The translations under genes were made by a program, and so were the position numbers. A stretch of 64,000 bases of DNA from Dendrobates tinctorius. Lineage: Eukaryota. Below, in pieces: positions 15,131-55,974 of the stretch (its first letter is position 1; the number at the start of each line of letters is the position of its first letter). The notes beneath the pieces were generated by a model, which was given only the letters and a program-made list of their open reading frames with translations, was not told the origin of the DNA and did not search any database. The stretch is taken from NCBI RefSeq assembly GCF_039654945.1, contig NW_027361703.1, positions 28,086,001 to 28,150,000 of the forward strand, written 5' to 3'.

Positions 15131-16578
15131 GCCACGAACATGCGGGAATATTTGTCCCCGTGTGCCGTCCCGGAATTACACAGGCATGTGTCCCACAACA
15201 TTACCTGTGCCCTCCACAATGCTGTTACTTGGAAAGTCCACCTAACCACAAACACGTGGACAAGTACTTGTGGTCAGGGATGGTACATCTCTCTGAGGGT
15301 ACACTGGGTTAACATAGTGGAAGCCGGGACCTACTCCGACCTTGGTATGGTGCCCATCCTCCCAAGCACAGAGTATTGCATGCCCTACGTCAATCTGGGT
15401 TGCCCCCACAGTGTACAGCCCCTGCACCTCTTCCTCCTTCACATCCTCTTCAGCCTCCAGCTATGAAAGTAGCACATCAGTCACAAGCTGGAAGCACTGC
15501 AGCACTGCCTCAAAGCAGGAACAGGCTGTGCTGAAGCTAATATGCTTACGTGACAAACCCCACAATGCTGAAGAGTTGTAGACAGCTCTGAAAGAGCAGG
15601 CAGATCGGTGGCTGAGTCCGCTGAATCCACAGCCAAGCATGGTTGTGTGTGGCAATGGCTGGAACCTGGTGGCTGCTCTGTGGCGAGGGAAGCTCACACA
15701 CGTGCCATGCCTGGCTCATGCGCTTAACCTAATTGGTCAATGTTTTTTGAAAGGCGACATGGAGCTGGCAGATCTGCTAGGAAAAGTACAATGCTCTGCA
15801 TACCCATTTTAGAAAGTATGCTACAGCCTCATCCGCCCTTGCCGTGATTCAGCAGCGCTTGCAGCTTCTGGCTCACCAACTGGTGTGTGATGCCCCCAGG
15901 CCTTGGAACTCTGCACTGCAGATGTTTGAGAGGATTTGTGATCACAAGAGGGCAGTTGGTGACTAGTATACCAGCATCAACAAGGTTGTCGATATTCAGT
16001 TCTGATTCCACACATAACATCTCAGGAGTGGACATGGATGTCTAACAAATGTAACATCCTCCAGAACTTTGAGGAATCCACCAAGAGGGTGAGCATCAAT
16101 GACACCATAGTTAACGTCTCCATCCTGCTTATCTGTGTTCTAATTTGAAGATTGATAGTTATTATAGAGCGAAAACATATTTACAGTTTAACAGTTTCAA
16201 AAACAACAGTCCTAAGTAACAACGATAACAATAATATAATAATTAAACCAAAATAAAACGACCTTGCTGGTGACAGCTTACAATTTACACTAACTCACAA
16301 TGATAACAATAATTAAACCCAAACAAAACAATCCTGCTCGTGAGAACTTACAATCTACAATGAGGTGGGGAAGATTAAAAATACAGGGGTGTATTTACAA
16401 GAAGGTATTTACAATGATGTTTATACAATGATATTACTGAGGTTAGTTGAAAGTCGTGGAGGCCTGAGGAAAAGGAGGAGGAGAGCATGGTCAGTCGTCC
16501 TCTTGGTGAGAACATGCAAAACACAAGCCGCGGAGACACCATCACATGTTTCTCAACACAAGCAAGCCAGTTTCCTAC

Positions 16579-16622
16579 TTCACACTGATGAGGGGCAATA
16601 CTCTGAAACAGCTGTCTGTGGA
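16579..16622 (+). ncRNA. Minimal type I hammerhead ribozyme
   Basis: ttcaca-CTGATGA-ggggcaatactct-GAAA-cagctg-TC-tgtgga; intact core boxes, palindromic stem III, GUC cleavage triplet. Confidence 0.85.
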
Positions 16623-16931
16623 TGGATACCATGTTTTGGCATAGATGGTTTCCTTCATTGGAGACTGCCCTTCCCGTGGTTGTTCCTTCCCGGGGAAAGA
16701 CCTGGCAAGTCATTGCTTGCGTTGAGAAACATGGGATGGTGTCTCCGCGGCTTGTGTTTTGCATTTTTTTGCATATTTCCCATAAGGGATGGGGGCATTG
16801 TTCTAGAATCACTGCATTGAGAAACATGTGATGGTGTCTCCGCAGTGTTGGATGTTGATCTCCATGAGTTCATTCATCCTCATTTTTCACAGTCTTTTAC
16901 TAGGCATTGCTCCTACTAGCCAGTTTCCTAC

Positions 16932-16975
16932 TCCACACTGATGAGGGGCAATACCCAAAAACAGCTGTCTGTGGA
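16932..16975 (+). ncRNA. Hammerhead ribozyme, second copy (GAAA mutated to AAAA, probably inactive)
   Basis: tccaca-CTGATGA-ggggcaataccca-AAAA-cagctg-TC-tgtgga; perfect 6-bp stem I. Confidence 0.75.
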
Positions 16976-17659
16976 TGGATACCATGTTTTGGCATAGGTG
17001 GTTTCCTTCATTGGAGACTGCCCTTCCCGTGGTTGTTCCTTCCCGGGGAAAGACTTGGCTAGTCATTGCTTGCGTTGAGAAACATGTGATGGTGTCTCCA
17101 CAGCTTGTGTTTTGCATGTTTTTGCATATTTCCCATAAGGGATGGGGGCATTGCTCTAGAATCACTGCGTTTAGAAACATGTGATGGTGTCTCCGCAGTG
17201 TTGGATGTTGATCTCCATGAGTTCATTCATCCTCATTTTTCACAGTCCTCTTGGTGAGGACACAGAAGTATTGACTGTTAGCAGTCTTGCATGCATAGCT
17301 GAGTTTATGTTACGCTGCCTTTCCCGTCACCCTCGCGTTATCAAAATTTTGGGTGACGGGCAATACTGATTGGTGACACTTCTAGACCCACGCTTCAAGG
17401 AGAACTTTACATCTCTTATTCCAGAGGCAGACAGGTGTACTAAAATGTTGGAGGACTAGAGGGCCCTTCTTGAGGAATTATTAAAAAAATTCACATCTGA
17501 AAACGCTGGCAGCAGAGGTCACAGAATGTTGGCCAAGCAAGGAGTACTGGTGAGAGAGACACAACTCCAAGCCAGCAAAGGCAGTGGAACACTGGCAAAG
17601 TTTGGGGAGAGTTTTCTCAGACCCTCCCATCGCCAGAGTTCAGACAGGGTAACAGTATG

Positions 17660-34367: not shown

Positions 34368-36917
34368 TCTAATATCTAAAGCTCAAAGTGTGTATGTGTG
34401 TATGTGTGTATGTTTGTTTGTATGTCCGGGATAGGCATCAGCACCATCGCAACTACAGCCACAAAATTTGGCACAGTCACACGTCTGGACCCCGAGAGTG
34501 TCCTAAGCTATGTTGTGAGGCAAAATTTTAACCCCGCGCGTTCCAATTCACCAAACAATGTTGCCCCTATCTACATACTGGGGGGAAAAGTGTGTGCGCG
34601 TCAAGCCCCACCCCTCATTGTGATGTCACAATGCCCCTATTTGCATACTGGGGAAGCAGTGTGTGTGCGCCAAGCCCCGCCCCTCATTATGATGTCACAA
34701 TGGTTGCCATGGCGATGCTGATGTCATCAAAGGTTGCAAGCCCCACCGCCGCTCATTATGATGTCATAATGGTTGACTATGAGATGGAGGATGTGTGATG
34801 AGTATATGGGCACCGGACTATGGGATGGAGGATATGTATGACAGGTATATGGGAACAACACTATGGGATGGAGGATATGTATATGGGCACGGGACTATGG
34901 GAGGGAGGATATGTATGATGGGTATATGGGAACGGGACTATGGGATGGAGGATGTGTGATGGGTATGTCATGTCCGCCATGTTTGTCATGTCTGTTTTGT
35001 CTCAAGAACTCCTGGAGCGATGTGCATATCTTGTCTGCTGTCCTGCATGTTCGCTAGAGCAGTGTGCACACTCACCTCATGTCTGAGCTGCAGGATGCCT
35101 GCGTTTCTGCTCTGCCTTCTGTGATCTTCTCGTCTTGTCTAGAGTCCCTGATCATGTGTCCCTGTCTAGATCCTGCACTGTCTGGTTCTGCAATCGTCTC
35201 GTCATGTCTGGAACTCTGATCATGTGACTGTGCTCTGTTATCCTGTGGATCTGAACCCGGAAGTGCTGCCCTGGTCCTGACCTGGAAGAGGAGGTGCTAT
35301 GCCACATATCAGGCCGCCCCTTCCTATGCTCAGGGCCTGAGTATTCTGTGACGGACTCAGCTCCTGCTGAGCCCATTTTTTGAGTGGACCCTCTGGGTCA
35401 TGGCACCCACCCACCGAGGGCGAGCTTACCTTGTGAGAATCCACCCCCTATACAGGGAGTGTCAGGGGCACCTTGCACGTTTTGCTTGTTTACACTGTAT
35501 TTGATCATGAGTTATCCTAATGAAGTTACCTTGCACCTACGTCTTGTCTCGTCTTGCTTCCTGCTTGTCCTTGTCGTCAGACACTCGTCTAGTGTCCCCT
35601 GAGCCGGCCGTCTGGTTCCAGCAGTCGTGGTGGCTCACCCCCTTGGTCTTGCCCCTGACACTCCCTGTATAGGGGGTGGATTCTCACAAGGTAAGCTCGC
35701 CCTCGGTGGGTGGGTGCCATGACCCAGAGGGTCCACTCAAAAAATGGGCTCAGCAGGAGCTGAGTCTGTCACAGAATACTCAGGCCCTGAGCATAGGAAG
35801 GGGCGGCCTGATATGTGGCATAGCACCTCCTCTTCCAGGTCAGGACCAGGGGAGCACTTCCGGGTTCAGATCCACAGGATAACAGAGCACAGTCACATGA
35901 TCAGAGTTCCAGACATGACGAGACGATTGCAGAACCAGACAGTGCAGGATCTAGACAGGGACACATGATCAGGGACTCTAGACAAGACGAGAAGATCACA
36001 GAAGGCAGAGCAGAAACGCAGGCATCCTGCAGCTCAGACATGAGTTGAGTGTGCACACTGCTCTAGCGAACATGCAGGACAGCAGACAAGATATGCACAT
36101 CGCTCCAGGAGTTCTTGAGACAAAACAGACATGACAAACATGGCGGACATGACAGGGTATATGGGCACTGGACTATGGGATGGAGGATATGTATGACGGG
36201 TATATGGGCACGGGACTATGGGATGGCGGATATGTATATGGGTACGGGACTATGGGATGGAAGATGTGTGATGGTATATGGGCACTGGACTATGGAATAG
36301 AGGATATGTTTGACGGGTATATGGGCACGGGACTATGGGATGGTGGATATGTATATGGGCACGGGATTATGGGATGGAGAATGTGTGATGGGTATACGGG
36401 CACTGGACTATAGGATGGAGGATATGTATGACGGGTATATGGGCACGGGACTATGAGATGGCGGATATGTATGATGGGTATATGGGCACTCGACTATGGG
36501 ATGGAGGATATGTATGATGGGTATATGGGCACGGGACTATGAGATGAAGGATGTGTGATGGGTATATGGGCACTCGACTATGGGATGGCGAATATGTATG
36601 ATGGGTATATGGGCATGGGACTATGGGATGGAGAATATGTATGATGGGTATATGGGCATGGGACTATGGGATGGAGAATATGTATGATGGGTATATGGGC
36701 ATGGGACTATGGGATGGAGGATGTGTGATGGGTATATGGGCACTCGACTTTGGGATGGAGGATATGTATGATGGGTATATGGGCACGGGCCTATGGGATC
36801 GTGGATATGTATGATGGGTATATGGGCATGGGACTATGGGATGGAGGATAATTATAATTTTCTATAACTAACCATAGTTAGTTACTATGCCCGGTCAGCG
36901 CCGGGCTCTTCAGCTAG
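34368..36917 (+). mobile_element. Non-autonomous Helitron (same family as 24210) with a nested palindromic element
   Basis: A|TCTAATATCTAAAGCT ... gcccggtcagcgccgggc hairpin, CTAG|T. Confidence 0.85.
34966..36154. mobile_element. Palindromic LTR-like element: 505-bp inverted arms around a 179-bp spacer
   Basis: TGTCA...TGACA termini; 5-bp TSD gggta; 34966-35470 is the reverse complement of 35650-36154 with only a few mismatches. Confidence 0.9.
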
Positions 36918-41465: not shown

Positions 41466-41832
41466 ATTATGTGTCCTTGTCACAGGGTATATGTCAATCA
41501 GACTTCCCAGGAACTGAGAAAATGGGCACATAAGCATTTGTCTGCCATCCATTTAGCAGTGACTGACCTGAAAAAGTTTGTATACACTAAAGGGTTGAGA
41601 CAAGAGCGCAATAGGGTCTTACCTGGGTGAATCGTATGAATTAAAAAGGTATTTATACTCACCCTTTCCAAGAGAGAGTAAAGCCTGTTTAATCGGTATG
41701 TCAGCCTGCTGCACGTCCAACGGTCCACAGCGGTGACCGCAGCAAAGATTCTTAGGAGTAAATTCTTGGACTTTAGGTGCGCTGCCAGACAAATTCCATA
41801 GCCAAACAAGGTTAATAAATTAACCCTTTATT

Positions 41833-41871
41833 CCCTACGCATTTCGAAGTATAACACTTCTTCTTCAGGGG
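41833..41871 (-). ncRNA. Minimal hammerhead (minus copy)
   Basis: ccc-CTGAAGA-a-gaagtgttatacttc-GAAA-tgcg-TA-ggg. Confidence 0.7.
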
Positions 41872-41877
41872 AGACAT

Positions 41878-41913
41878 CCCCTGAAGAAGTGTTATACTTC
41901 GAAACGCGTAGGG
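41878..41913 (+). ncRNA. Minimal hammerhead (plus copy)
   Basis: ccc-CTGAAGA-agtgttatacttc-GAAA-cgcg-TA-ggg. Confidence 0.7.
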
Positions 41914-44900
41914 AATAAAGGGTTAATTTATTAACCTTGTTTGGCTATGGAATTTGTCTGGCAGCGCACCTAAAGTCCAAGAATTTACTCCTAAGAATCT
42001 GACCTGAAAAAGGGTAAGACCTTAACCCCATTGCTGTCCATTTCCTGACAAAACATAGTGGAAATCTAACAACATTAGTTTCTTTGGTCTAGAAAAGATC
42101 ATAGGCGATGGGAGAAGTGGCAGCTGCCAGAAACAATTGTTACAAATAGAGGCAGGATGGATTTTCAACTTACAATCGGTCATCCCATCTGGACTAAATG
42201 AAGGATTACTTTTCACTGAATTTCTGGATTGACTCATCACGATGACCTTCATCGCTTGGATTCCGTTTCACTGTCGATACCTCAGGACATAGCTTTCATA
42301 TACGATTTACATCCTCTCACCTCCTCCACCTCTTGGGATTAATAATGGTTGTACTTGGAGTAGGATTGTTAGCCTTCCATTTTTCATTTCTTCTTTTTCA
42401 TCTTGACATCAGTATCCAGTGCTTGATATCTGCGTTATTAATTGCTTGGATTGACTTTTTTTTACGCTTAAGGCCTTGCTTCATCTTATACGTTTCCAAA
42501 TATCCTCTTGCTTTTCCATTCCAAATACTTGTTGGGGCCCTTGGAATCCTAAGTACCTGGGTTTTGACTATTGTCCTACTTATGACATTCTACTCTATGG
42601 GATGAATGTTTAAATCACATCAATAAAGCACTAAAAACTTTTGCTTTTTTGGCTTCTTTTGGGACCCTTTACTATCAGGTTGAATATATACATATCATTC
42701 CATGATTGGATCTGTACTGGGTTCTGGACCCATCCTTGTCCCCGCCCACCCCCATAAGTTTCCCGAACCATTGTATCTATCTGTTGCTACTTTATTGCAT
42801 TCCACATGCCTCTGTCCAAAATGTCGCCGTTGGACACCGGCCATAGGAATGTATTATATATATCCATCAGCAAGGCTGGCATTTGGGGCAGGCAGACAAG
42901 GCAGCTGCCTGGGGCTCCCACCCACAAAGGGTGCCCCCTGTGTCTGCAGCCCCTTTATGAAGTGCCCAGAGGGTGTACAGGATTACTTACAGTGAATAAC
43001 ACTGTGCATTCTCTGCAATCCTTGATTGTCTCTCCCAAACCCCCTCCGATTCCCCCTCTCTATCCCCTGCAGTGTTAGGTTAGAAGATGAGAGTGAGGGG
43101 GAGGGACACAGCACAGCAGAGGTCAGACCTGGGGCAGGACATGTCTGCAGACCTGTGTGTGCGTTTCCCCTCCTCCTCATCATGGCTGCTTCTACATCAC
43201 TGTCCTGAGATCTGCACAAGTGACATCAGGACCTGGTAAGCATACATATAACCGGTATGTATACAGTGTGTGTCTGTATATGTATACACATATACAGACA
43301 CACACACATATAGTATGTGTGTGCATATATACTGTATATAGTATGATTGTGTATATCTGTGATTCATTTGTGTGTGTTTACATATATATATGCATGTACA
43401 TACAGTATACAGTATGTGTGTCTGTGTATATTATATATGGATACTGCATGTGTGCAGTATATTGTGAAATATATGTATAAAGTGTATATGCATATGTGCA
43501 TACTGTATATACTTGTAACGTTGGTGTGTTTGTACCTTGTTTCCCCGGCTTTACTCTGCTTGTCTCTGCTTTCACCCTTTGTTCCTCTCCCCCTAATGAC
43601 CTGGAATGCTGTTGTCAGTTACCTGTGTGGATGCTGCTCAGTTCCCGGCTCCGCTGTGTAGCTGTACACGCATGTGTGGCTCCGCTGCACTGCATGACCA
43701 CCCACTCATGCGGCCCCTGGCTGCCGCTGTGGAAAGCTATGCACGGGTTGCAAGGTCCTCTGTACTGTGCATAACTTACCACGTGTGTTCAGGCTTGCAG
43801 CTAATGCTAGGTGTCCTTTGCAATGCTGATTTGTGTCTGGCTATGCTTAGGGGTGCACGGCCACACCTTCCTTGCTTTTATGGGGAATGGGTGTGTGCTA
43901 CGCCTGAGGCCTGAGAGAGAGGCCATCCTAGTATGCCATGCCAGATGACCCTGGATTGCATCAACCTGTGATGACCCCTGCCATCATCTGATGTCTGTCC
44001 GAGGTTGGTGTCTGATGTTCTTCTGCTGAGCCTGTGCTACACCTGAGACCTGAGAGAGAGGTCATCCTAGTATGCCCATGCCAGATGACCCTGGACTGCA
44101 TCAACCCGTGATGTCCTCATGCCTTCGTCTGTTATCCTGAGACGTGTACCTTTCCCTGATGTGTGGAATCGGGAGCCTGGCATAGTTATGTTTCGTTTAT
44201 GTACTGTGATTTCGTTTGAGTAAACTTTATGTTCTCCACACCTGAAGTTGTGCGGTGTCATATAGTTCTGCACATCGCCATCTTGTCCAAATGCTCAGCT
44301 GCCACAGACCCTGCTTGCTGCCTTTCCCTAGTCTGAGTAGGTCCAGGTTACTCTATGTGGTCCAATGGGTCCAAATTCCATCCCCACCTGGGACGCTTGC
44401 CCCACATCGTTGTGGTTGGGCGAAGTGGAGGCATAGGCTGGGCCGCGTCCGCGGTCGCAGTCAAAACAGTAAGCTCTGGCCATGGACTCCGCTGAGAATG
44501 TGTGTACTGCAGAACTTTTCCCGAGCCCCGCCTTGTCAGCGGATTAGACTGCTCGGACTCCACCTGCTAGTGGATTAGATTGCTCAATCCAGTGCTTAGT
44601 TGGAATCGGATTGGATTTTTTGAGCTATGGACTCTGCTGCCATTTTGTGAACTGCGGGACTTACCGCCTTACCCACCAGAATTTTCTGGGGAATTTTTTT
44701 TTCTCTTGGGCCTTTAGAAGATGGGGCCTGAGGAGGGGTATAATGTAACGCTGGTGTGTTTGTACCTTGTTTCCCTGGCGTTACTCTGCTTGTCACTGCT
44801 TTAACCCTTTGCTCCTCTCCCCCCCAGTGAGCTGGAATGCTGTTGTCAGTTACCTGTGTGGATGCTGCTCAGGTCCCGGCTCTGCTGCGTAGCCGTACAT

Positions 44901-46062: not shown

Positions 46063-47362
46063 TAATCTGTGTCTCCTCCCATTCAGTTCCATCCCATTGC
46101 TTCTAGTCTTTCCTTGTGCAAATGAGAATAAAGATGATCCTTCTACAATGTGACAGCCCTTGAGATATTTGTAGACAGCTATTAAGTCTCCTCTCAGCCT
46201 TCTCTTTTGCAAGCTAGACATTCCGAAATCCTGTAACCTTTCCTCATAAGACAGGGTTTGCAGACCGGTCACCATTCTGGTCGCTCTTTTCTGAACTTGC
46301 TCCAGTTTGTTGATGTCTTTTTTAAAATGTGGCACCCAAAACTGGACACATTATTCCAGATGAGGTCTGACCAAAGAGGAGTAGAGGGCAATAATGACTT
46401 CACGTGATCTAGACTGTATGTTTCTGTTAATACATCCTAGAATTGCATTTGCCTTTTTTGCTGCTGCATCACACTGTTGACTCATATTCAGTCTGTGATC
46501 TATTAGTATACCCAAGTCTTTTTCACATGAGCTGTTGCTTAGCCCTACTTCTACCATTCTGTATATGCTTTTTTCATTTTTATTGACCAGATGTAAACTT
46601 TGCATTTTTCCCTGTTAAAAACGATTCTGTTAGTTGCTGCCCACTGCTCCAATTTATTTATATATTTTTGAATCCTCTCTCTCTCTTCTCTAGTATTAGC
46701 TAACCCTCCTAGCTTTGTGTCATCAGCAAATTTAATCAGTTTACTCTCAATTCCTTCATCTAAATCATTGATAGAGATGTTGAACAATACAGGTCCCAGG
46801 ACAGAGCCCTGTGGTACCCCACTTGAGACATTCTTCCAACTGGATGTGCAGCTATTTATGACCACTCTTTGGGTCCGATCACTAAGCCAGTTATGAATCC
46901 ATCTAACAGTTGCCTTGTCCATTACATACTTAGTCATTTTTTCAATAAGGATTGTGTGAGATACTTTGTCAAATGCTTTGCTGAAGTCAAGATATACTAT
47001 ATCTACAGCATTTCCCTGATCCACCCAGTCAGTGATTCTGTCATAGAAGGAAAATAAGTTAGTCTGACATGACTTATTAGTTACAAACCAATGCTGACTC
47101 TGTTTAATCACTTCATTCTTATCCAGGTACTTACATACATGTTGCTTAATAATTTGTACAAAGATCTTTCCTGGTATAGAAGTCAGACTCACTGGCCTAT
47201 AGTTGCCTGGGTCCACCTTCTATAATAATAATAATAATAATAATCTTTATTTTTATATAGCGCTAACATATTCCGCAGCGCTTTACAGTTTGCACACATC
47301 ATCATCACTGTCCCCGATGGGGCTCACAATCTAAATTCCCTATCAGTATGTCTTTGGAATGT

Positions 47363-47393
<31 letters not shown>

Positions 47394-49470
47394 ACGCAAA
47401 CACGGGGAGAACATACAAACTCCTTGCAGATGTTGTCCTTGGTGGGATTCGAACCCAGGACCCCAGCGCTGCAAGGCTGCAGCGCTAACCACTGAGCCAC
47501 CGTGCCTTCTTCCCCCTTTTGAAGATAGGAACAACATTTCCTCTTCTCCAGTCTTCTGGGACTTCTCCTGTTCTCCAAGAATTTTCAAAGATTATGGAGA
47601 GGGGTTCAAAAATTTCTTCTGCTATCTCCTTCAGTACTCTGGGGTGTAATTCATCTGGACCTGGAGACTTGAATTCATTTAGTTTAGCTAAGTGTTTCCT
47701 CACTATCTTTCTGTCTATAGATATCCTAGATTCTTCTATTCCCTTAATAGGACAGTGAAGAACAGTTGATGTTACATTTTCTTTCTGAGAGAAAACAGAT
47801 GCAAAATAGGAATTTAAAAGTTCGGCCTTCTCAACATCCTGTCTTACCATTTCATCATTTTCATCCTGTAAAAATCCTATAGCATCTTTGACTTTTCTTT
47901 TACTTTTGACATATCTCCAAAATCCTTTATTATTGCTTTTGACGTCTCTTTCTCTTGCAATCCTCAATTCATTGTCAGCTTTAGTAATCTGATTGGTGCC
48001 CTGTAGGTTCTGCAGACAGCATTATATTCTTCTTTAGATATGCCTCCCTCTTTCCATTTTATAAACATTTCTTTCTTCCTTTTTAGCATGTGCTTAAGTT
48101 CTGTGTTCATCCATCCTGGTTTCCTTAAATGCTTCCTATTCTTCCCTCTTTTCGGAATTGTTAACAATTGTGCTTTGAGAATTTCATTTTTCAAGATTTC
48201 CCATCCTTCCTGGACATTTTTGTCCTTAAGGATATCCAGCCATTGGATCCCTCCAATTCTCTTTCTGAGTACCTTAAAATCTGCCTTTCTGAAATCAAAC
48301 CTTGACGTCTGAGTCTTCACAGGTCTTCCTCCTCTAGTTATCCAAAATTCTAAAATAGCATGGTCGCTACCTCCTAGACTCTCAGCCACTTTTACATCCT
48401 CAACCAATTCCTCCCTGTTTATGAGGATTAGATCCAAGGTAGCAGATCCCCTTGTTTTCTCCACCTTTTGGAAGATAAAGTTGTCAGCAAGAGAGGATAA
48501 GAATTTCCTTGACCTGATAGTTTTGCCTGAGAGAGATTCCCAACAAATGTCTGGATAGTTGAAATCTCCCATGACAACTATGTCATATTTTTTGGAGAAC
48601 TTGGCCATTTGATGCATAAAGAGTTCATCCATATCTTCAGCTTTTACTGGAGGCCTGTAGTTAATGCCTACAATGGTGTCCTTTCCATTGTTCTGTCCTT
48701 ATATTCTTACCCAAACAGTTTCCACAGAACTCCCAGTCTCTGAAGCTTCAATCTCTGTGCAGACATACGCATTTCTAACATACAATGCGACACTTCCTCC
48801 TCGTTTATCAAGTCTGTTTCTTGCAAGTAAGTTGTATCCTTCTAACCTTGTATTCCAATCATGTGTATTGTCTCACCAAATTTCAGTGATTCCAATGAAA
48901 TCATATTTCTTTTCCTGCGTTAGTAGTTCCAATTCTCCTTGTTTGTTGCCCATGCTTTGTGCATTAGTATAGAAACATTTTAGTTTGTGATTGGTTTCAC
49001 TTTCTCCAATATTTTTATTATTTAGATTCTTTAGTCTTTGTTATTTCCTCCCACTTCTAATAGCAGAATCCTCCATAACATTTGTCAGGTGTATGGCTTT
49101 TTCTGGCCTTATGCTTCCCTCCCACGTTGTTCTAGTTTAAAGCTCTCCTGATGAGTGTAGCAAGGCGACTGCCAACTACATGTTTTCCAGTCTTCGTAAG
49201 GTGCACCCCATCTCTAGCAAGTAGTCCATCGTATAGGTAATTCACTCCGTGATCCAGAAATCCAAAACCTTGCTGACGGCACCATCGACGTAGCCAGTTG
49301 TTCACCTGCAGAATCTTATTCCATCTCCTTGTTCCATGGCTATCCACTGGGAGGATGGAAGAGAAGACCACCTGCGCTCCCAGTTGTTTCACTTTCTTAC
49401 CTAAGTTTTCAAAGTCACTGCAGATTGTTTCCAGGTCGTTTCTTGCTGTATCATTTGTCCCCACATGTAC
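46063..49470 (-). mobile_element. CR1 LINE: ORF1 SGNH esterase remnant (49132-49470) and ORF2 APE-RT (46063-48980)
   Basis: HVGTND...DGVHL; YTNAQSMGNK; MGDFNYPDICW; DPGNYRPVSLTS; GVPQGSVLGP; KFADDTKL. Confidence 0.95.
47222..47506 (-). mobile_element. tRNA-derived SINE with an L2-type tail, inserted in CR1
   Basis: A box tggctcagtgg, B box gttcgaatcc, (TTA)n tail, TSD-like ccttct. Confidence 0.9.
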
Positions 49471-51751: not shown

Positions 51752-52384
51752 TCAATGGCCCGAGACCCCCCAACATGCTATGGCCCGCTCAATGCCCTTC
51801 TGAAGACCGAGAGCCCAAATATCGGAGCCAACCGAATTCAGATGAACCCCATCGGCCAGCAAAAAATCACCCTCGCCCTTTTCCAAATCAAAGTGTCGAA
51901 CGGCCACTCCCCCATTCCTGATGACAAAAGAAGACACAGCCCTGTTTACCTTTATCCTGGCCTTGCTGACCTTTGTTAAAGACCTCATGGAACGCCATCG
52001 CCTACGAGGGACGATGTCAGACCAAACAATAGTGACCCCTCGGTATAGCAACCACAGGCGCAAACAATCCTGCTTGATGTCCCTTATCAATTCCTGAAAC
52101 GGTCGAACCGCCAAGTCGTTACCCCCAACATGTAGCAACAGGATGTCCGGAGCGCGGTCCAACCGAACGCACTCGTGTATTTCTGGCAAGACCCATCTCC
52201 ACTCAATCCCCCTAAAACCACACCAACGCAACAAGGCCGTAGTCCTGAAAAACCCCAACTGTCTGCCTTCGTTCCTGACATCGGCTCGCAATGCTCCCCA
52301 GTAAACGAAGGAATGACCAAAAATCCACACCAGCAACGGCTCGACACCTGAAATAAAAAAGGCAATGCAAAACATCAAACCCAA
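51752..52384 (-). CDS. Ngaro-associated SGNH hydrolase ORF (open)
   Basis: IFGHSFV (block I), HVGGNDL (block III), ADGVHL (block V). Confidence 0.85.
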   Translation of the reverse strand: MGLMFCIAFFISGVEPLLVWIFGHSFVYWGALRADVRNEGRQLGFFRTTALLRWCGFRGIEWRWVLPEIHECVRLDRAPDILLLHVGGNDLAVRPFQELIRDIKQDCLRLWLLYRGVTIVWSDIVPRRRWRSMRSLTKVSKARIKVNRAVSSFVIRNGGVAVRHFDLEKGEGDFLLADGVHLNSVGSDIWALGLQKGIERAIACWGVSGH

Positions 52385-52415
52385 CCTAAATTAAACGTGG
52401 ATGCAACCCTCTGCA

Positions 52416-53371
52416 TCACCAGTCACCACCCAGCGACCTAACATAACTTCGGTAACGATTGGACGCCCAACCGCCAATGCGCTGAATCGCAGCCGCACCC
52501 AAACCCCGAACTGCCGCTTCTGACACCGCCCCTATCCTGAAAGAATGAGAAGCAAAATGGGATTCATCCAATCCCAACAATCGAATGGACTTCTTAAAAA
52601 CAGCGCCAAATTGGTATCTGGACACAACAGGGAACCGCTCAAACGAGGACTAAGTTCCCAAAAACTCCGCAAACACTGAACGGGACACATTAAAGACCTG
52701 GGCACACTGCCTAACACAACTCGGCGGCCTTTTTCTGCCTGATCCGTCTTGGACCGCCGCAGCCAAAATTCAATGCCCCGTGCAGTAACCACAACATCCC
52801 TGGCCAATATACCACCAATTGACTCTTTGTTACCCGACACGAGCTCCCCTACCCTCAATGCGCCAAAGAATGCCAACGAAAAAGCTAGGCGAAATAACAA
52901 AACCTCGTAGCGTGAAGCACACACCGACTCCAAAATGCCGCCCAACTGTTCCAATACATTAAAAGATATCGGAAGCCTCACGTCGCCACCGCTTTTCAAA
53001 CGGCGAAACCCTTTTGCCACCTGTTTCACCAAAAATGTCTTTGTCAAATCACGACAGCTGCGCAAACGGAAACCAAAAGACAACCCTGCCAAAACCCGCA
53101 TGGCTTTTGCACCAGACCAACCCTCGGATGCCCCGCACCCCAACCAAGACAACAAAATTCCCTCCTGATTCAGCCCGGGCCCAACAGCCGCATTGGCTGC
53201 AAGATGCTCCTCCCACTTGTGCCAGACTGCCCGGTATGCCTCCCAAGTTTTCGGGGCTAAAGACGACTCAATCAGCGACTCCGCAGCCCATAAGCCATTT
53301 TCCACAGCTCCTCCGGACAAGCTAAACCCATGATCTCTGCCTCTGGCGCCAAAGAGCGGAACCGATCCCAC
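52416..53371 (-). pseudogene. Tyrosine recombinase (frameshifted)
   Basis: AFFGALRVGE; LRRSKTDQ; SHSFRIGA; GGWASNRYRSYVR. Confidence 0.92.
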
Positions 53372-54880
53372 TGCGAATGAGAAAGAGAGTCAGCTATATC
53401 GTTCTTGACACCTGGAACATGTGTCGCGGTCACATGTGCATTCAGCTCCAAACATAGTAAGACCAATTGTTGCAACACCCGAACGACTGGAGGAGACAAT
53501 GCAGTAAGACCATTAATCGCGCACACCACACCCATGTTATCGCAATTAAAACGCACGCGCCGATCCCGAAACTCCCGTCCCCACAGGTGTACGGCTACGA
53601 AAATCGGAAAGATCTCCAACAAAGTGATGGTGCGTACCAAGCCATCCACTGGGCTACTGGGACGTGCACCACTGCCCCCGGAAGTAAGCCCCAAATCCGA
53701 CACCGCCAGCCGCATCCGTAAACAACTCCAACGCGTCGTTGCCGACCACCTCTTCCATCACCAACGAACGGCTGTTATACCCCTCCAGAAAAGACTCCCA
53801 AATCGTCAAATCTGCCCTCAGTTCCGCCGATAATCTGATGAAATGATGCGGGGCTCGAATCCCTGCGGTCGCGCTTGCCAGCCGACGTGAAAAGACTCGC
53901 CCCATCGGCATGACTCGACATGCAAAGTTGAGCTTCCCCAACAAAGACAGGAGATCACGCAATGACAACTTTTTTACACGGCGCGCTCGGACCACCTCCG
54001 CCCGCAAATCCGCCAACTTATCATCAGGCAGCCGGAACTCCCAACTCACCGTGTCAATGACAATTCCCAAAAAATGCAGGCATGTACTAGGGCCCTCGGT
54101 TTTCCCAGGTGCAAGTGGAACTCCAAAACGCTCCGCCACCCACTCAATGGCTTGCAAAATTCTGTCACAACGCAAAGAATCCGCCGGGCCAACACATAAA
54201 AAGTCATCCAAGTAATGAATGACCGAATCGAAACTGGAAACATCACGCACGACCCACTCCAGAAAGGAACTGAAGGCTTCAAAATACGCCCAGGACAGCG
54301 AACATCCCATGGGTAGACACCTGTCCACAAAAAAACATGCTTTCCCAATAGCAACCCAGCAGCTTCATGCTATCTGGGTGGACCGGCAGCAAACGAAATG
54401 CGGATTCAATGTCCGTTTTAGCCATGAGGGCACCCAGACCACATTTCCGCACCCACCGTGCTGCTTCATCAAAGGAGGAGTAAACCACCGAACAGATCTC
54501 CAAATCAATACCGTCGTTAACCGACCCCCCGCGTGGGTAAGACAAATGTTGAATAAGCCGAAACTTATTCGGCTCTTTCTTCGGCACCACTCCCAAAGGG
54601 GAAACCACCAAATCCGAAAGCGGGGGAGAAACAAAGGGGTCTGGCATACAGCCCAACGAAACTTCCTTTTCCAGTTTTTCAGAAACCACCGTACTATGTA
54701 ACAAGGCTGAACGCAAATTTTTCAAAACCCGCGGAATTGCAAAAGGGGGGTGAGGGATTATAAAACCGTCTTTAAAACCCGCGTACAGCAAAGCCGCCTT
54801 CTCCCTGTCCCCATATCTATTTAGATAAGGGACCATCCTTTCCAGCTTCACTGGAGTCTCCCCCTTGGGAATAACTACCG
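53272..54880 (-). pseudogene. Ngaro RT-RNase H (frameshifted)
   Basis: SPLGVVPKKEPNKFRLIQHLSYP; KTDIESAFR; LPMGCS; HYLDDF; FTDAAG; CDNMGVV; NDIADSLS. Confidence 0.92.
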
Positions 54881-55974
54881 CTGGTTCTGGGCTTCCCTTT
54901 CTTGAAACACTTGGCGGCTCCATGCGAAGCGCTATTGCAGTTGAAGCAAATATGCTTGAATTTGCAATTCGCCCCAAACTTACACTGGCCGTCGTTAAAC
55001 TGCCAGCACACTCCCAACTTAAGACTCCCCATTTGACCTTGCCCGCCTCCGCCTGAGACACTGGAATTGCTGCTACTCTGGCTGGGACTCCCAGCCCCCC
55101 CGTGAAAGGAGCTCCCAAACTTATTTTGAGCTATGACCCGCATCCACAACCCAATGTCCTTCTGGTCCCAACGGATAGCCGGACGTACAGCCTTCCTCTG
55201 CCGAAATTGCTCGTCGTACCGCAACCAAGCCTACCCCCCGTACACCCTGTAGGCCTCCCTTATGGCATCAAAGTAACAAAATAACGCCGAGCAATTATCG
55301 GGGGCCTTTTCCCCAATGACGCTTGCCAAAATAGCGAACGCCTGTTGCCAATTAACAAACGTTTGAGGAATCAGATACCACCTGCCCTTTTCTTTGTCCT
55401 CCTTTTTACTATCGTCCTTCTTCTCCTTATCCAAATTAAATTTCTCGAGTGGTAACAAGGAAAATATTTCCACGTACTCGTCCTTCCAAATGCGCTCCTT
55501 TACTTCCTTCTTTAAATGAGCCCTCAGCTGGCCTTCAAAACAAACATACACCTCCCCATGAACCCTGTCGTCCAAATGCACACGACATTCTTTTTCCTTT
55601 TCAGTTTGCACCGATACCGACACTGCCTCCCTTGCGCGCCCGGCCAGATCCGATTGTGCCCCAACCCAAGCTGCTACCGGTGAAGGCGCGACAAGACCCC
55701 GCTTCAGACGTGACACCAAACTACGCATGTCCGTGAGCACGTTGCTAACACCACCGGCTGCGCCTACGCCACTGAACCCCAACCCCCACCAACACCGAGG
55801 GATTCTGCCAACGGCCCCCCCGCTTAACCAAGGTGATGTTGCAACGGGATGACAAACAGGGGAACCAGAAGCATACTCACCAGGCTGCGAGGGGGCTGTG
55901 TGCCCTCCAGCCGGAAAACCTGGATCCGCGGATGTGACCTCGCCGGCTTGATGGCGACCTCTGGGACTCCCCAC
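54817..55974 (-). pseudogene. Ngaro ORF1 (gag-like) with a C-terminal Cys/His finger, one in-frame stop
   Basis: KERIWKDEYVEIFSLL; YDEQFRQRKA; CWQFNDGQCKFGANCKFKHICFNC...H...C. Confidence 0.8.

What the first reader, a model, noticed from the sequence alone, without database searches (positions are those of the whole stretch)
16511..17244. Candidate frog non-LTR retrozyme: 353-nt tandem unit delimited by hammerhead ribozymes
Seen: a non-coding insertion with a 14-bp TSD, made of about two tandem units. Each unit carries stem I (tccaca/tgtgga), CUGAUGA, stem II, GAAA, a palindromic stem III (cagctg) and a GUC site, and the cores are exactly 353 bp apart. A 55-bp inverted piece of the unit caps the 5' end. 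Established: newt satellite 2 and other metazoan non-LTR retrozymes are short tandem units with minimal type I hammerheads that cleave as dimers and yield monomeric or circular RNAs. Inference: this is such a family, copied from a circular RNA template (hence more than one unit) by Penelope RT/endonuclease, whose 5' inversion and long TSD it shares. In this copy the second core has lost G12. I cannot tell whether this particular family has already been described.
Basis: partly seen in the sequence, partly recalled or inferred. Interest (0 to 1): 0.9.

Follow-up and report, generated by a model that had tools for sequence, protein, structure and literature searches.

The report
Frog hammerhead retrozyme insertion, decayed copy
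This is one worn-out, ORF-less jumping-repeat insertion made of nearly two 353-base units, each carrying a small self-cutting (hammerhead) RNA motif; it belongs to a very abundant frog repeat family of a kind already described in salamanders and clawed frogs, and its tidy insertion scars show that it arrived by reverse transcription.

Summary
A 734-bp ORF-less insertion (16511-17244) lies between two perfect 14-bp direct repeats. It consists of 1.93 tandem units of 353 nt plus a 55-nt inverted piece of the unit at its 5' end. Paralogous copies of the host hAT repeat, seen in public contigs, lack the insertion and carry one copy of the repeat.

Each unit has a canonical metazoan type I hammerhead: helix I 6 bp, helix II 4 bp, helix III 2 bp with a palindromic loop, and a GUC site. 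A generic descriptor finds it once in the window, against 0.0025 expected. Rfam models do not reach threshold.

Unit B has lost G12, and unit A has a weakened helix II. In four public runs (three organism labels), about 99% of the family's depth reads the intact core at the two changed positions of unit B. The family is very high-copy.

Best reading: a dead retrotransposed copy of a non-LTR retrozyme family, a kind known from axolotl (NAR 2020) and Xenopus (bioRxiv, July 2026). Not shown here: RNA cleavage, RNA circles, Penelope as the mobiliser, or a circular rather than multimeric template.

First readers of this scan noted similar 350-352-nt units with target-site duplications elsewhere in this genome. 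I did not check those notes. This is a new member of a known kind.

The parts
16497..16510 (.). Left copy of the 14-bp target-site duplication GTCCTCTTGGTGAG
   Evidence: Empty-site contigs join 16499 to 17248 (X1), 16499 to 17250 (X5) and 16483 to 17246 (X6 record 28).
16511..16565 (-). 55-nt inverted piece, the reverse complement of unit positions 149-203. Its first 4 nt (AACA) could equally belong to the target, so they count as microhomology.
   Evidence: 95% to both units, with one private CpG-to-TpG change.
16566..16917 (+). Unit A of the 353-nt repeat
16579..16622 (+). Hammerhead A. The core is intact (CUGAUGA, GAAA, GUC) with predicted cleavage after 16616. Helix II is weakened to two G-U pairs (16602, 16604), and helix I has one G-U pair (16580).
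   Evidence: descriptor hit; sub-threshold alignment to a hammerhead model; dimer fold.
16918..17244 (+). Unit B, ending at unit position 327. This is 78 nt before the next expected cleavage site. GTC is shared with the target.
16932..16975 (+). Hammerhead B, inactivated: 16958 is A where G12 should be, and 16957 is A where C11.1 should be. The predicted former cleavage site is after 16969.
   Evidence: Family depth reads C and G at these two places in about 99% of depth in four runs.
17245..17258 (.). Right copy of the 14-bp target-site duplication
17071..17198 (+). Internal 33-nt direct repeat within the unit (17071-17103 and 17166-17198; in unit A 16718-16748 and 16813-16845). Between the two copies lie two octamer-like TTTTGCAT motifs (17110-17117 and 17120-17127).
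   Evidence: Function unknown.

Best explanation
This is a dead, retrotransposed copy of a very high-copy frog repeat family of the non-LTR retrozyme kind. The unit is about 353 nt, non-coding and 46% G+C. It carries a canonical metazoan type I hammerhead whose helix III is only 2 bp, capped by a palindromic loop.

Inferred life cycle (not shown here):
1. Tandem units are transcribed into multimeric RNA.
2. Two neighbouring hammerheads pair through the 8-nt palindrome ACAGCUGU into a double hammerhead and cut after GUC. This releases 353-nt monomers, which a host tRNA-type ligase can circularise.
3. A longer-than-unit RNA, either a multimer of at least 2.5 units or a circle, is reverse transcribed at a staggered chromosomal break by an RT/endonuclease supplied in trans. 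That enzyme is most likely from a Penelope-like element.

At this locus the scars fit target-primed reverse transcription:
- The bottom-strand nick primed on the RNA at a GUC microhomology (unit position 327).
- The top-strand nick, 14 nt away, primed a second, short cDNA at an ACA microhomology. This is twin priming, and it produced the 55-nt 5' inversion.
- Repair then left the 14-bp duplication.

Shown here: the insertion, the duplication, the inversion, the empty sites, the motif, the intact family core and the high copy number. Since insertion the copy has decayed, by about 2% per segment, and both hammerheads are damaged.
For: - Anatomy.
- Empty-site contigs from paralogs of the host hAT repeat, each with a single copy of the duplicated 14-mer.
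- Copy number: summed word depth in the element is 0.1-1.07 million in X1, against about 20-65 thousand in the right flank. It is also high in two other organism labels.
- Intact family core: the family majority reads C and G at 16957 and 16958, restoring C11.1 and G12.
- Timing: all nine A/B/inverted-piece differences that the family table resolves are private to one segment, and several are CpG decay. The three segments were therefore alike when they were made.
- Motif significance: one descriptor hit against 0.0025 expected.
- Dimer fold: co-fold of the two motifs gives the textbook double hammerhead at -30.6 kcal/mol, against -24.0 for the two alone. The monomeric hammerhead fold is only -2.5 against an MFE of -11.2.
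- Monomer RNA is more structured than shuffles, z = -2.7.
- Literature: the architecture of 6-bp helix I, 4-bp helix II and 1-2-bp helix III with a palindromic loop, in roughly 300-bp low-GC tandem repeats with TSDs longer than 4 bp, defines metazoan non-LTR retrozymes (PMC4209133, PMC7229834). Penelope insertions typically carry partial tandems and an inverted 5' copy (PMC8557442).
- A second ORF-less insertion with a 13-bp direct repeat, head-to-head arms and a Penelope-type minimal hammerhead lies at 41577-41999 in the same window.
Against: - No Rfam hammerhead model reaches threshold.
- No RNA ends, cleavage or circles could be examined. All runs were contigs and none is on record as RNA.
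- No other copy of the family could be fetched, so core-versus-flank conservation, recurrent 3' ends and linkage to Penelope ORFs are untested.
- At this locus the hammerhead region carries 4 of the 14 A/B difference columns, so it is not conserved here.
- No Penelope RT lies in the window; the only RT seen is a LINE.
- The two RT start points differ and both show microhomology. This is unlike the anole Penelope, which starts at one non-homologous site on both strands (PMC11167929).
- Only one of nine Xenopus retrozyme dimers cleaved in vitro.
Confidence: 0.7

Rival explanations
1. It is an ordinary 5'-truncated insertion of an autonomous Penelope-like element. The 353-nt unit is that element's pseudo-LTR, and this copy happens to contain only pLTR material.
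For: Penelope insertions are heavily 5'-truncated, form partial tandems and often have an inverted copy at the 5' end (PMC8557442). In Xenopus nearly every retrozyme family is sister to a Penelope pLTR.
Against: Units A and B follow each other head to tail with no ORF remnant between them. The hammerhead is the canonical type (helix I 6 bp, helix II 4 bp, a real helix III), not the Penelope minimal type with a long helix II and no helix III (PMC4209133). The window contains an example of that minimal type at 41.8 kb for contrast. Depth is very high along the whole unit.
Confidence: 0.15
2. A LINE (L1- or L2/CR1-type) mobilised the repeat RNA in trans, as with SINEs or processed pseudogenes. 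The 5' inversion is classic L1 twin priming.
For: A 14-bp TSD, a 5' inversion and microhomology at both priming sites are L1-like hallmarks (established knowledge). A LINE with APE and RT domains lies in the window at 46551-48632.
Against: There is no poly(A) or microsatellite tail at the 3' end. The nick site (GGAC/GACT on the bottom strand) is not T-rich. Retrozymes co-occur phylogenetically with Penelope elements.
Confidence: 0.1
3. It is a DNA-level event: a piece of satellite array or extrachromosomal circle was pasted in, or one unit was inserted and later duplicated by unequal crossing-over.
For: The 2026 preprint favours local amplification of tandem units by unequal crossing-over.
Against: The event shows a perfect staggered-cut duplication, a short inverted 5' piece and a precise empty site. 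Units A, B and the inverted piece are about equally and privately diverged, so they date from one event.
Confidence: 0.05

Closest known systems
Axolotl non-LTR retrozymes Rtz_331 / Rtz_353 and newt satellite 2 (Cervera & de la Pena 2020, PMC7229834; Epstein & Gall 1987)
   Same: Tandem, non-coding units of about 330-353 nt, with low G+C and a type I hammerhead. [quoted passage not shown] Monomers occur as linear and circular RNA.
   Different: The hammerhead sequence differs: frog helix II is GGGG/CCCC with palindrome CAGCUG, while axolotl Ax353 has CACGUG and GUA. By eye the units share only a TGTTTTGCAT 10-mer. RNA, cleavage and circles are shown for the axolotl and not here. The present copy is a dispersed 1.9-mer with a TSD and a 5' inversion, not a long array.
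Xenopus non-LTR retrozyme families (Li, Clavereau & Pollet, bioRxiv 10.64898/2026.07.22.740005)
   Same: These are frog tandem repeats with type I hammerheads, averaging 316 bp in amphibians. They occur as monomers, dimers and multimers dispersed over the chromosomes, and are proposed as non-autonomous derivatives of Penelope pLTRs.
   Different: The preprint's main text names only Xenopus frogs, and this genome appears to be a different frog (unverified earlier notes say a poison frog). In the passages I read and searched (one TSD hit, on plant LTR retrozymes), the preprint reports no TSDs, 5' inversions or empty sites for these elements. Whether this family is among its families could not be checked, because the supplementary tables are not held.
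Penelope-like element pLTRs with minimal hammerheads (Cervera & de la Pena 2014, PMC4209133; Craig et al. 2021, PMC8557442; Frangieh et al. 2024, PMC11167929)
   Same: Partial tandems, an inverted 5' copy, hammerheads expected to act as dimers, and multimeric RNA as the template.
   Different: There is no RT/GIY-YIG ORF. The hammerhead is canonical rather than minimal. The RT start points differ between strands and show microhomology. No 30-40-bp tail was recognised.

Membership tests
Hammerhead ribozyme, type I (canonical metazoan form) | Conserved core C3-A9 (CUGANGA), G12-A14 (GAA), the A15.1-U16.1 pair and H17 | tested here: met
   Unit A has every core position (16585-16591, 16605-16608, 16615-16616). 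Unit B fails at G12 (16958). The family majority restores it.
Hammerhead ribozyme, type I (canonical metazoan form) | Helices I (about 6 bp, open end), II (about 4 bp hairpin) and III (1-2 bp with a small palindromic loop), arranged around the core | tested here: met
   Descriptor hit with helices of 6, 4 and 2 bp, matching the definition in PMC4209133.
Hammerhead ribozyme, type I (canonical metazoan form) | Score at or above the gathering threshold of an Rfam hammerhead covariance model | tested here: not met
   No hit at gathering scores. The best match is RAGATH-1-hammerhead at 12.7 bits against 56.3. Short-helix-III animal motifs are usually found with descriptors instead.
Hammerhead ribozyme, type I (canonical metazoan form) | Self-cleavage after H17 | not testable with these tools
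   Only contigs were available, with no read ends. Thermodynamics predicts a double hammerhead.
Hammerhead ribozyme, type I (canonical metazoan form) | Helices supported by covariation across family members | not tested
   No other copies could be fetched.
Metazoan non-LTR retrozyme | Short (about 150-450 bp) non-coding unit in head-to-tail tandem, one type I hammerhead per unit, low G+C, and no LTR/PBS/PPT | tested here: met
   353-nt unit, 1.9 copies, 46% G+C, only short spurious ORFs. Definition from PMC7229834.
Metazoan non-LTR retrozyme | Multicopy dispersed family with TSDs longer than 4 bp | tested here: met
   Very high summed depth in three organism labels. This copy has a 14-bp TSD with empty paralogous sites. 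Dispersal of other copies was not seen directly.
Metazoan non-LTR retrozyme | Expressed as linear and circular monomer RNA | tested here: inconclusive
   Run X16 (guessed to be RNA) holds contigs of the unit with the intact core but none of the flanking hAT repeat. The run's kind is unconfirmed, and contigs show neither ends nor circles.
Penelope-like element (autonomous) | ORF with a telomerase-like RT and a GIY-YIG endonuclease between pLTRs | tested here: not met
   No ORF inside the insertion. No Penelope RT was found among the nine large window ORFs scanned.

The most novel reading that the evidence does not exclude
The scars of this copy record reverse transcription of a circular hammerhead RNA. 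A linear template would need at least 2.5 units. The three segments (unit A, unit B, inverted piece) were alike when made. Both cDNAs started at internal microhomologies, not at an RNA end or at the ribozyme cut site. If family-wide insertions show random circular permutation of their 3' ends, together with frequent twin-primed inversions, this would be a direct genomic footprint of circRNA-templated, rolling-circle retrotransposition in a vertebrate.
Probability: 0.3. Interest if true: 0.7.

Novelty: new member of a known kind. Interest (0 to 1): 0.4.

Why it matters
How animal retrozymes move is still open. The 2020 and 2026 papers infer mobilisation by Penelope elements from co-occurrence and sequence similarity, and partly attribute arrays to unequal crossing-over.

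This copy is a clean single-event record. It has a precise empty site, a 14-bp staggered-cut duplication, a longer-than-unit template, two internal microhomology-primed cDNA starts and a twin-priming-type inversion. A census of such scars in this very high-copy family could discriminate three things: circle versus multimer templates, Penelope versus LINE machinery, and retrotransposition versus local amplification.

On its own the locus is a decayed member of a known class.

Tried and rejected
- Rfam found nothing at gathering scores. In the 81-nt stretch it gave one sub-threshold hammerhead alignment.
- There is no other copy of the unit in the 64-kb window.
- A search of the scan's index by sequence came back blank.
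- To fetch other genomic copies I used a spurious 97-aa ORF of the unit as a protein query. No candidates were found.
- Both metagenome scans, one with the core pattern and one with the internal repeat, found nothing.
- The look-up of sequencing runs offered only Logan contigs with coded organisms, and no raw reads. RNA ends, the cleavage site and back-joined reads could therefore not be examined.
- The one supplementary table of the 2026 preprint that I opened is an oligo order form with no sequences.
- I did not align the frog unit to the axolotl Ax353 sequence printed in a supplement.
- I built no family consensus. I report only the majority letters that read laying lists.
- A chance motif is rejected.
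- Later tandem duplication is considered unlikely, because the three segments are equally and privately diverged.

Full report
**1. What is in the sequence**

Tandem Repeats Finder reports one array, 16565-17247, with period 353, 1.9 copies, 95% matches, no indels and score 1268. The repeat finder gives the same two copies at a spacing of 353.

The 14-mer GTCCTCTTGGTGAG occurs at 16497-16510 and again at 17245-17258, exactly at the two edges. The match runs to 18 nt with one mismatch.

Bases 16511-16565 are the reverse complement of unit positions 149-203 (16713-16767 in unit A, 17066-17120 in unit B), 95%.

The insertion is therefore 734 bp: a 55-nt inverted piece, unit A (to 16917), and unit B cut short at unit position 327 (17244). 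It holds only short spurious ORFs. It is 46% G+C and CpG-depleted, with 11 CpGs observed against 36 expected. The unit has no other copy in the 64-kb window.

**2. It is a true insertion**

The flanks belong to an old hAT transposase copy. It shows a CLAHALNL-type motif upstream and LDPRFK just downstream.

Public contigs from paralogs of that host repeat cross the site without the insertion and with a single copy of the 14-mer:
- joint 16499 to 17248 in X1 (depth 139, 11 ambiguous letters);
- joint 16499 to 17250 in X5;
- a 272-nt contig in X6 that covers 16372-16483 and then 17246-17388.

This shows an insertion with a target-site duplication. It does not show which enzyme made it.

**3. The hammerhead**

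Unit A reads as follows:
- helix I: UUCACA (16579-84) pairs with UGUGGA (16617-22);
- core: CUGAUGA (16585-91);
- helix II: GGGG, loop CAAUA, CUCU (16592-604);
- G12-A14 plus A15.1: 16605-08;
- helix III: A-U and C-G pairs around the loop AGCU (16608-15);
- cleavage: C17 at 16616.

Unit B is the same 353 nt further on, except that 16957 (C11.1) and 16958 (G12) are both A.

I wrote a generic minimal type I descriptor: CUGANGA, a helix II hairpin of at least 3 bp, GAAA, a helix III of at least 2 bp, UH, and a helix I of at least 5 bp. It finds exactly one site in the window, unit A. It finds 0.0025 per window in 400 Markov-1 shuffles.

Rfam is negative. Nothing reaches gathering scores, and nothing appears at E<=10 in 1.8 kb. 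In an 81-nt stretch there is one 12.7-bit alignment to RAGATH-1-hammerhead (gathering score 56.3). That alignment does line up the core, GAAAC, GUC and helix I. The published animal motifs with very short helix III were likewise found with descriptors.

The helix sizes (6, 4 and 2 bp, with a palindromic loop) are those given for canonical metazoan type I hammerheads. They are not those of the Penelope minimal motif, which has a 7-8-bp helix II, a 4-5-bp helix I and no helix III (PMC4209133). The design GAAAC-AGCU-GUC is close to the coral retrozyme motif GAAAC-AGUACU-GUC printed in the 2020 supplement.

**4. How it would cut**

ACAGCUGU is a perfect 8-nt palindrome. Co-folding the two 52-nt motif segments gives the following structure without any constraint:
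- an intermolecular 8-bp helix III;
- both helix II hairpins;
- helix I formed crosswise between the two segments.

This is the double hammerhead of Forster et al. 1988 (cited in PMC6155905). Its energy is -30.6 kcal/mol, against -24.0 for the two segments alone. The monomeric hammerhead fold of unit A is worth only -2.5 kcal/mol, against an MFE of -11.2. This is a prediction, not a demonstration.

The 353-nt monomer between the two predicted cut sites folds better than shuffles: -117 kcal/mol, z = -2.7, with 0 of 100 shuffles as good. Folded as a circle, 61% of its bases are paired.

**5. The family**

I laid four public runs on 16300-17500 at 85% likeness or better. All are Logan contigs with coded organism labels A, B and C. 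The element carries summed word depths of 0.1-1.07 million in X1, against about 20-65 thousand in the right flank, which is itself a repeat. Depth is likewise high in X5 (label B) and X6 (label C). These figures are not copy numbers, but the family is clearly very abundant and is shared by three organism labels.

At 16957 and 16958 about 99% of that depth reads C and G in all four runs.

The table lists majority letters for nine of the sites at which units A, B and the inverted piece differ. At every one, a single segment differs from the majority and the others agree with it. The sites are:
- unit A: 16707, 16734, 16765, 16801 and 16604;
- unit B: 16957, 16958, 17055 and 17172.

By comparison among the three segments alone, 17100 and 17102 (unit B) and one site in the inverted piece are also private, and all three are CpG decay. 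The three segments were thus alike when made, and each has since drifted by about 2%. A and B differ at 14 of 330 positions, 4.2%. With the anuran rates quoted in PMC12822217 (1-3 x 10^-9 per site per year), that is very roughly 7-21 million years, inflated by CpG decay.

At this locus the hammerhead is not protected. Four of the 14 difference columns fall in its 52 nt.

**6. RNA**

No listed run is on record as RNA, and contigs cannot show ends. One small run of label A, guessed to be RNA (X16), holds contigs of the unit. These include an 84-nt contig across hammerhead B that differs from the window at two letters, and the run's other-letters rows at 16957 and 16958 show the intact core. X16 has no depth at all on the flanking hAT repeat, which a DNA sample in X1-like proportions should show. 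This is a hint of transcription and no more. Cleavage, monomers and circles remain untested.

**7. Mechanism of insertion (inference)**

The right end of the copy lies 78 nt before the next cut site, not at a ribozyme end. There the unit (CACAGUCUUUU) and the target (GTCCTC) share GTC, which fits a bottom-strand 3' end annealing to an internal GUC.

The left end starts with AACA, which the target also has (GACA or AACA in paralogs). This fits the top-strand 3' end, 14 nt away, annealing inside the RNA and making a short antisense cDNA. That is twin priming as known from L1 (established knowledge).

The inverted piece maps 150-204 nt upstream of the 5' end of the direct part. A linear template would therefore need at least about 2.5 units; a circle would also do. 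The anole Penelope study proposes multi-copy RNA as the normal template. It also found that hammerhead mutants insert equally well in vitro (PMC11167929). More than one unit is therefore no evidence for a circle.

That study also found a single, non-homologous RT start site used from both strands. Here the two starts differ and both show microhomology, a point against a simple Penelope reading.

In favour of Penelope:
- partial tandems plus an inverted 5' copy are its hallmark (PMC8557442);
- retrozymes co-occur with Penelope elements;
- the copy lacks an A-rich tail;
- the same window holds a second ORF-less insertion (41577-41999) with a 13-nt direct repeat, head-to-head arms and a Penelope-type minimal hammerhead.

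I put Penelope as the mobiliser at about 0.6 and a circular template at about 0.3-0.35.

**8. Comparison with what is known**

- Newt satellite 2 and the axolotl Rtz_331 and Rtz_353 families have the same kind of unit. They cleave as dimers and yield linear and circular monomers (PMC7229834).
- A July 2026 preprint describes 57 non-LTR retrozyme families in three Xenopus species. It finds them related to Penelope pLTRs, and reports that one of nine dimers cleaved in vitro.
- In 2014 about 9,000 minimal hammerheads were already counted in X. tropicalis.

The kind is therefore known, in frogs as well. What this locus adds is a clean set of insertion scars. I did not find such scars reported in the sections of the preprint that I read.

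Earlier unverified notes of this scan call the genome a poison frog. They list similar units of 350-352 nt with TSDs on other pieces of the genome. I could not read those stretches.

**9. Verdict**

This is a new member of a known kind, and I score its interest at 0.4.

Noticed in passing
window 41564-42012: A second hammerhead-bearing, ORF-less insertion of 423 bp (41577-41999), between 13-nt direct repeats TGACCTGAAAAAG (41564-41576 and 42000-42012). It has head-to-head arms at 41746-41863 and 41883-42000 (118 nt, 99%) around a 19-nt centre, and the inverted copy runs 168 nt further. Each arm starts with a Penelope-type minimal hammerhead: CUGAAGA, an unpaired A, a 6-bp helix II, GAAA, the palindrome ACGCGU and a 4-bp helix I. 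The left arm shows CpG decay in the palindrome, and the right arm has a 3-nt deletion in helix II.
   Followed up: partly
window 17106-17127 (and 16753-16774 in unit A): There are two octamer-like TTTTGCAT motifs (7/8 to ATTTGCAT) in each unit, between the two copies of a 33-nt internal direct repeat. The axolotl Ax353 retrozyme printed in a supplement shares the 10-mer TGTTTTGCAT. From memory, newt satellite 2 is said to use an snRNA-type promoter with an octamer. This is a possible internal promoter and was not tested.
   Followed up: no
window 15300-16510 and 17245-17500: The host of the insertion is a decayed hAT-type transposase copy (CLAHALNL-like and LDPRFK motifs). It is itself a repeat with depth of tens of thousands in the public runs. 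Its paralogs supplied the empty-site evidence.
   Followed up: partly
window 16511-16565 with 16713-16767: The inverted piece and unit A form 55-nt inverted repeats 147 nt apart. Any read-through transcript would fold into a long double-stranded hairpin, which could be a substrate for small-RNA pathways.
   Followed up: no
window 46551-48632 (minus strand) and 51752-55974: There is a LINE with endonuclease (Exo_endo_phos) and RVT_1 domains. Further on, a run of long minus-strand ORFs includes one with a weak GDSL-lipase match, as in the ORF1 of some CR1/L2-type LINEs.
   Followed up: partly
window 34966-36154: A palindromic element with 505-nt arms (99% complementary, 179 nt between them) sits inside a 36-43-nt minisatellite. 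My relaxed descriptor found no hammerhead in it. It is the subject of another note of this scan.
   Followed up: no
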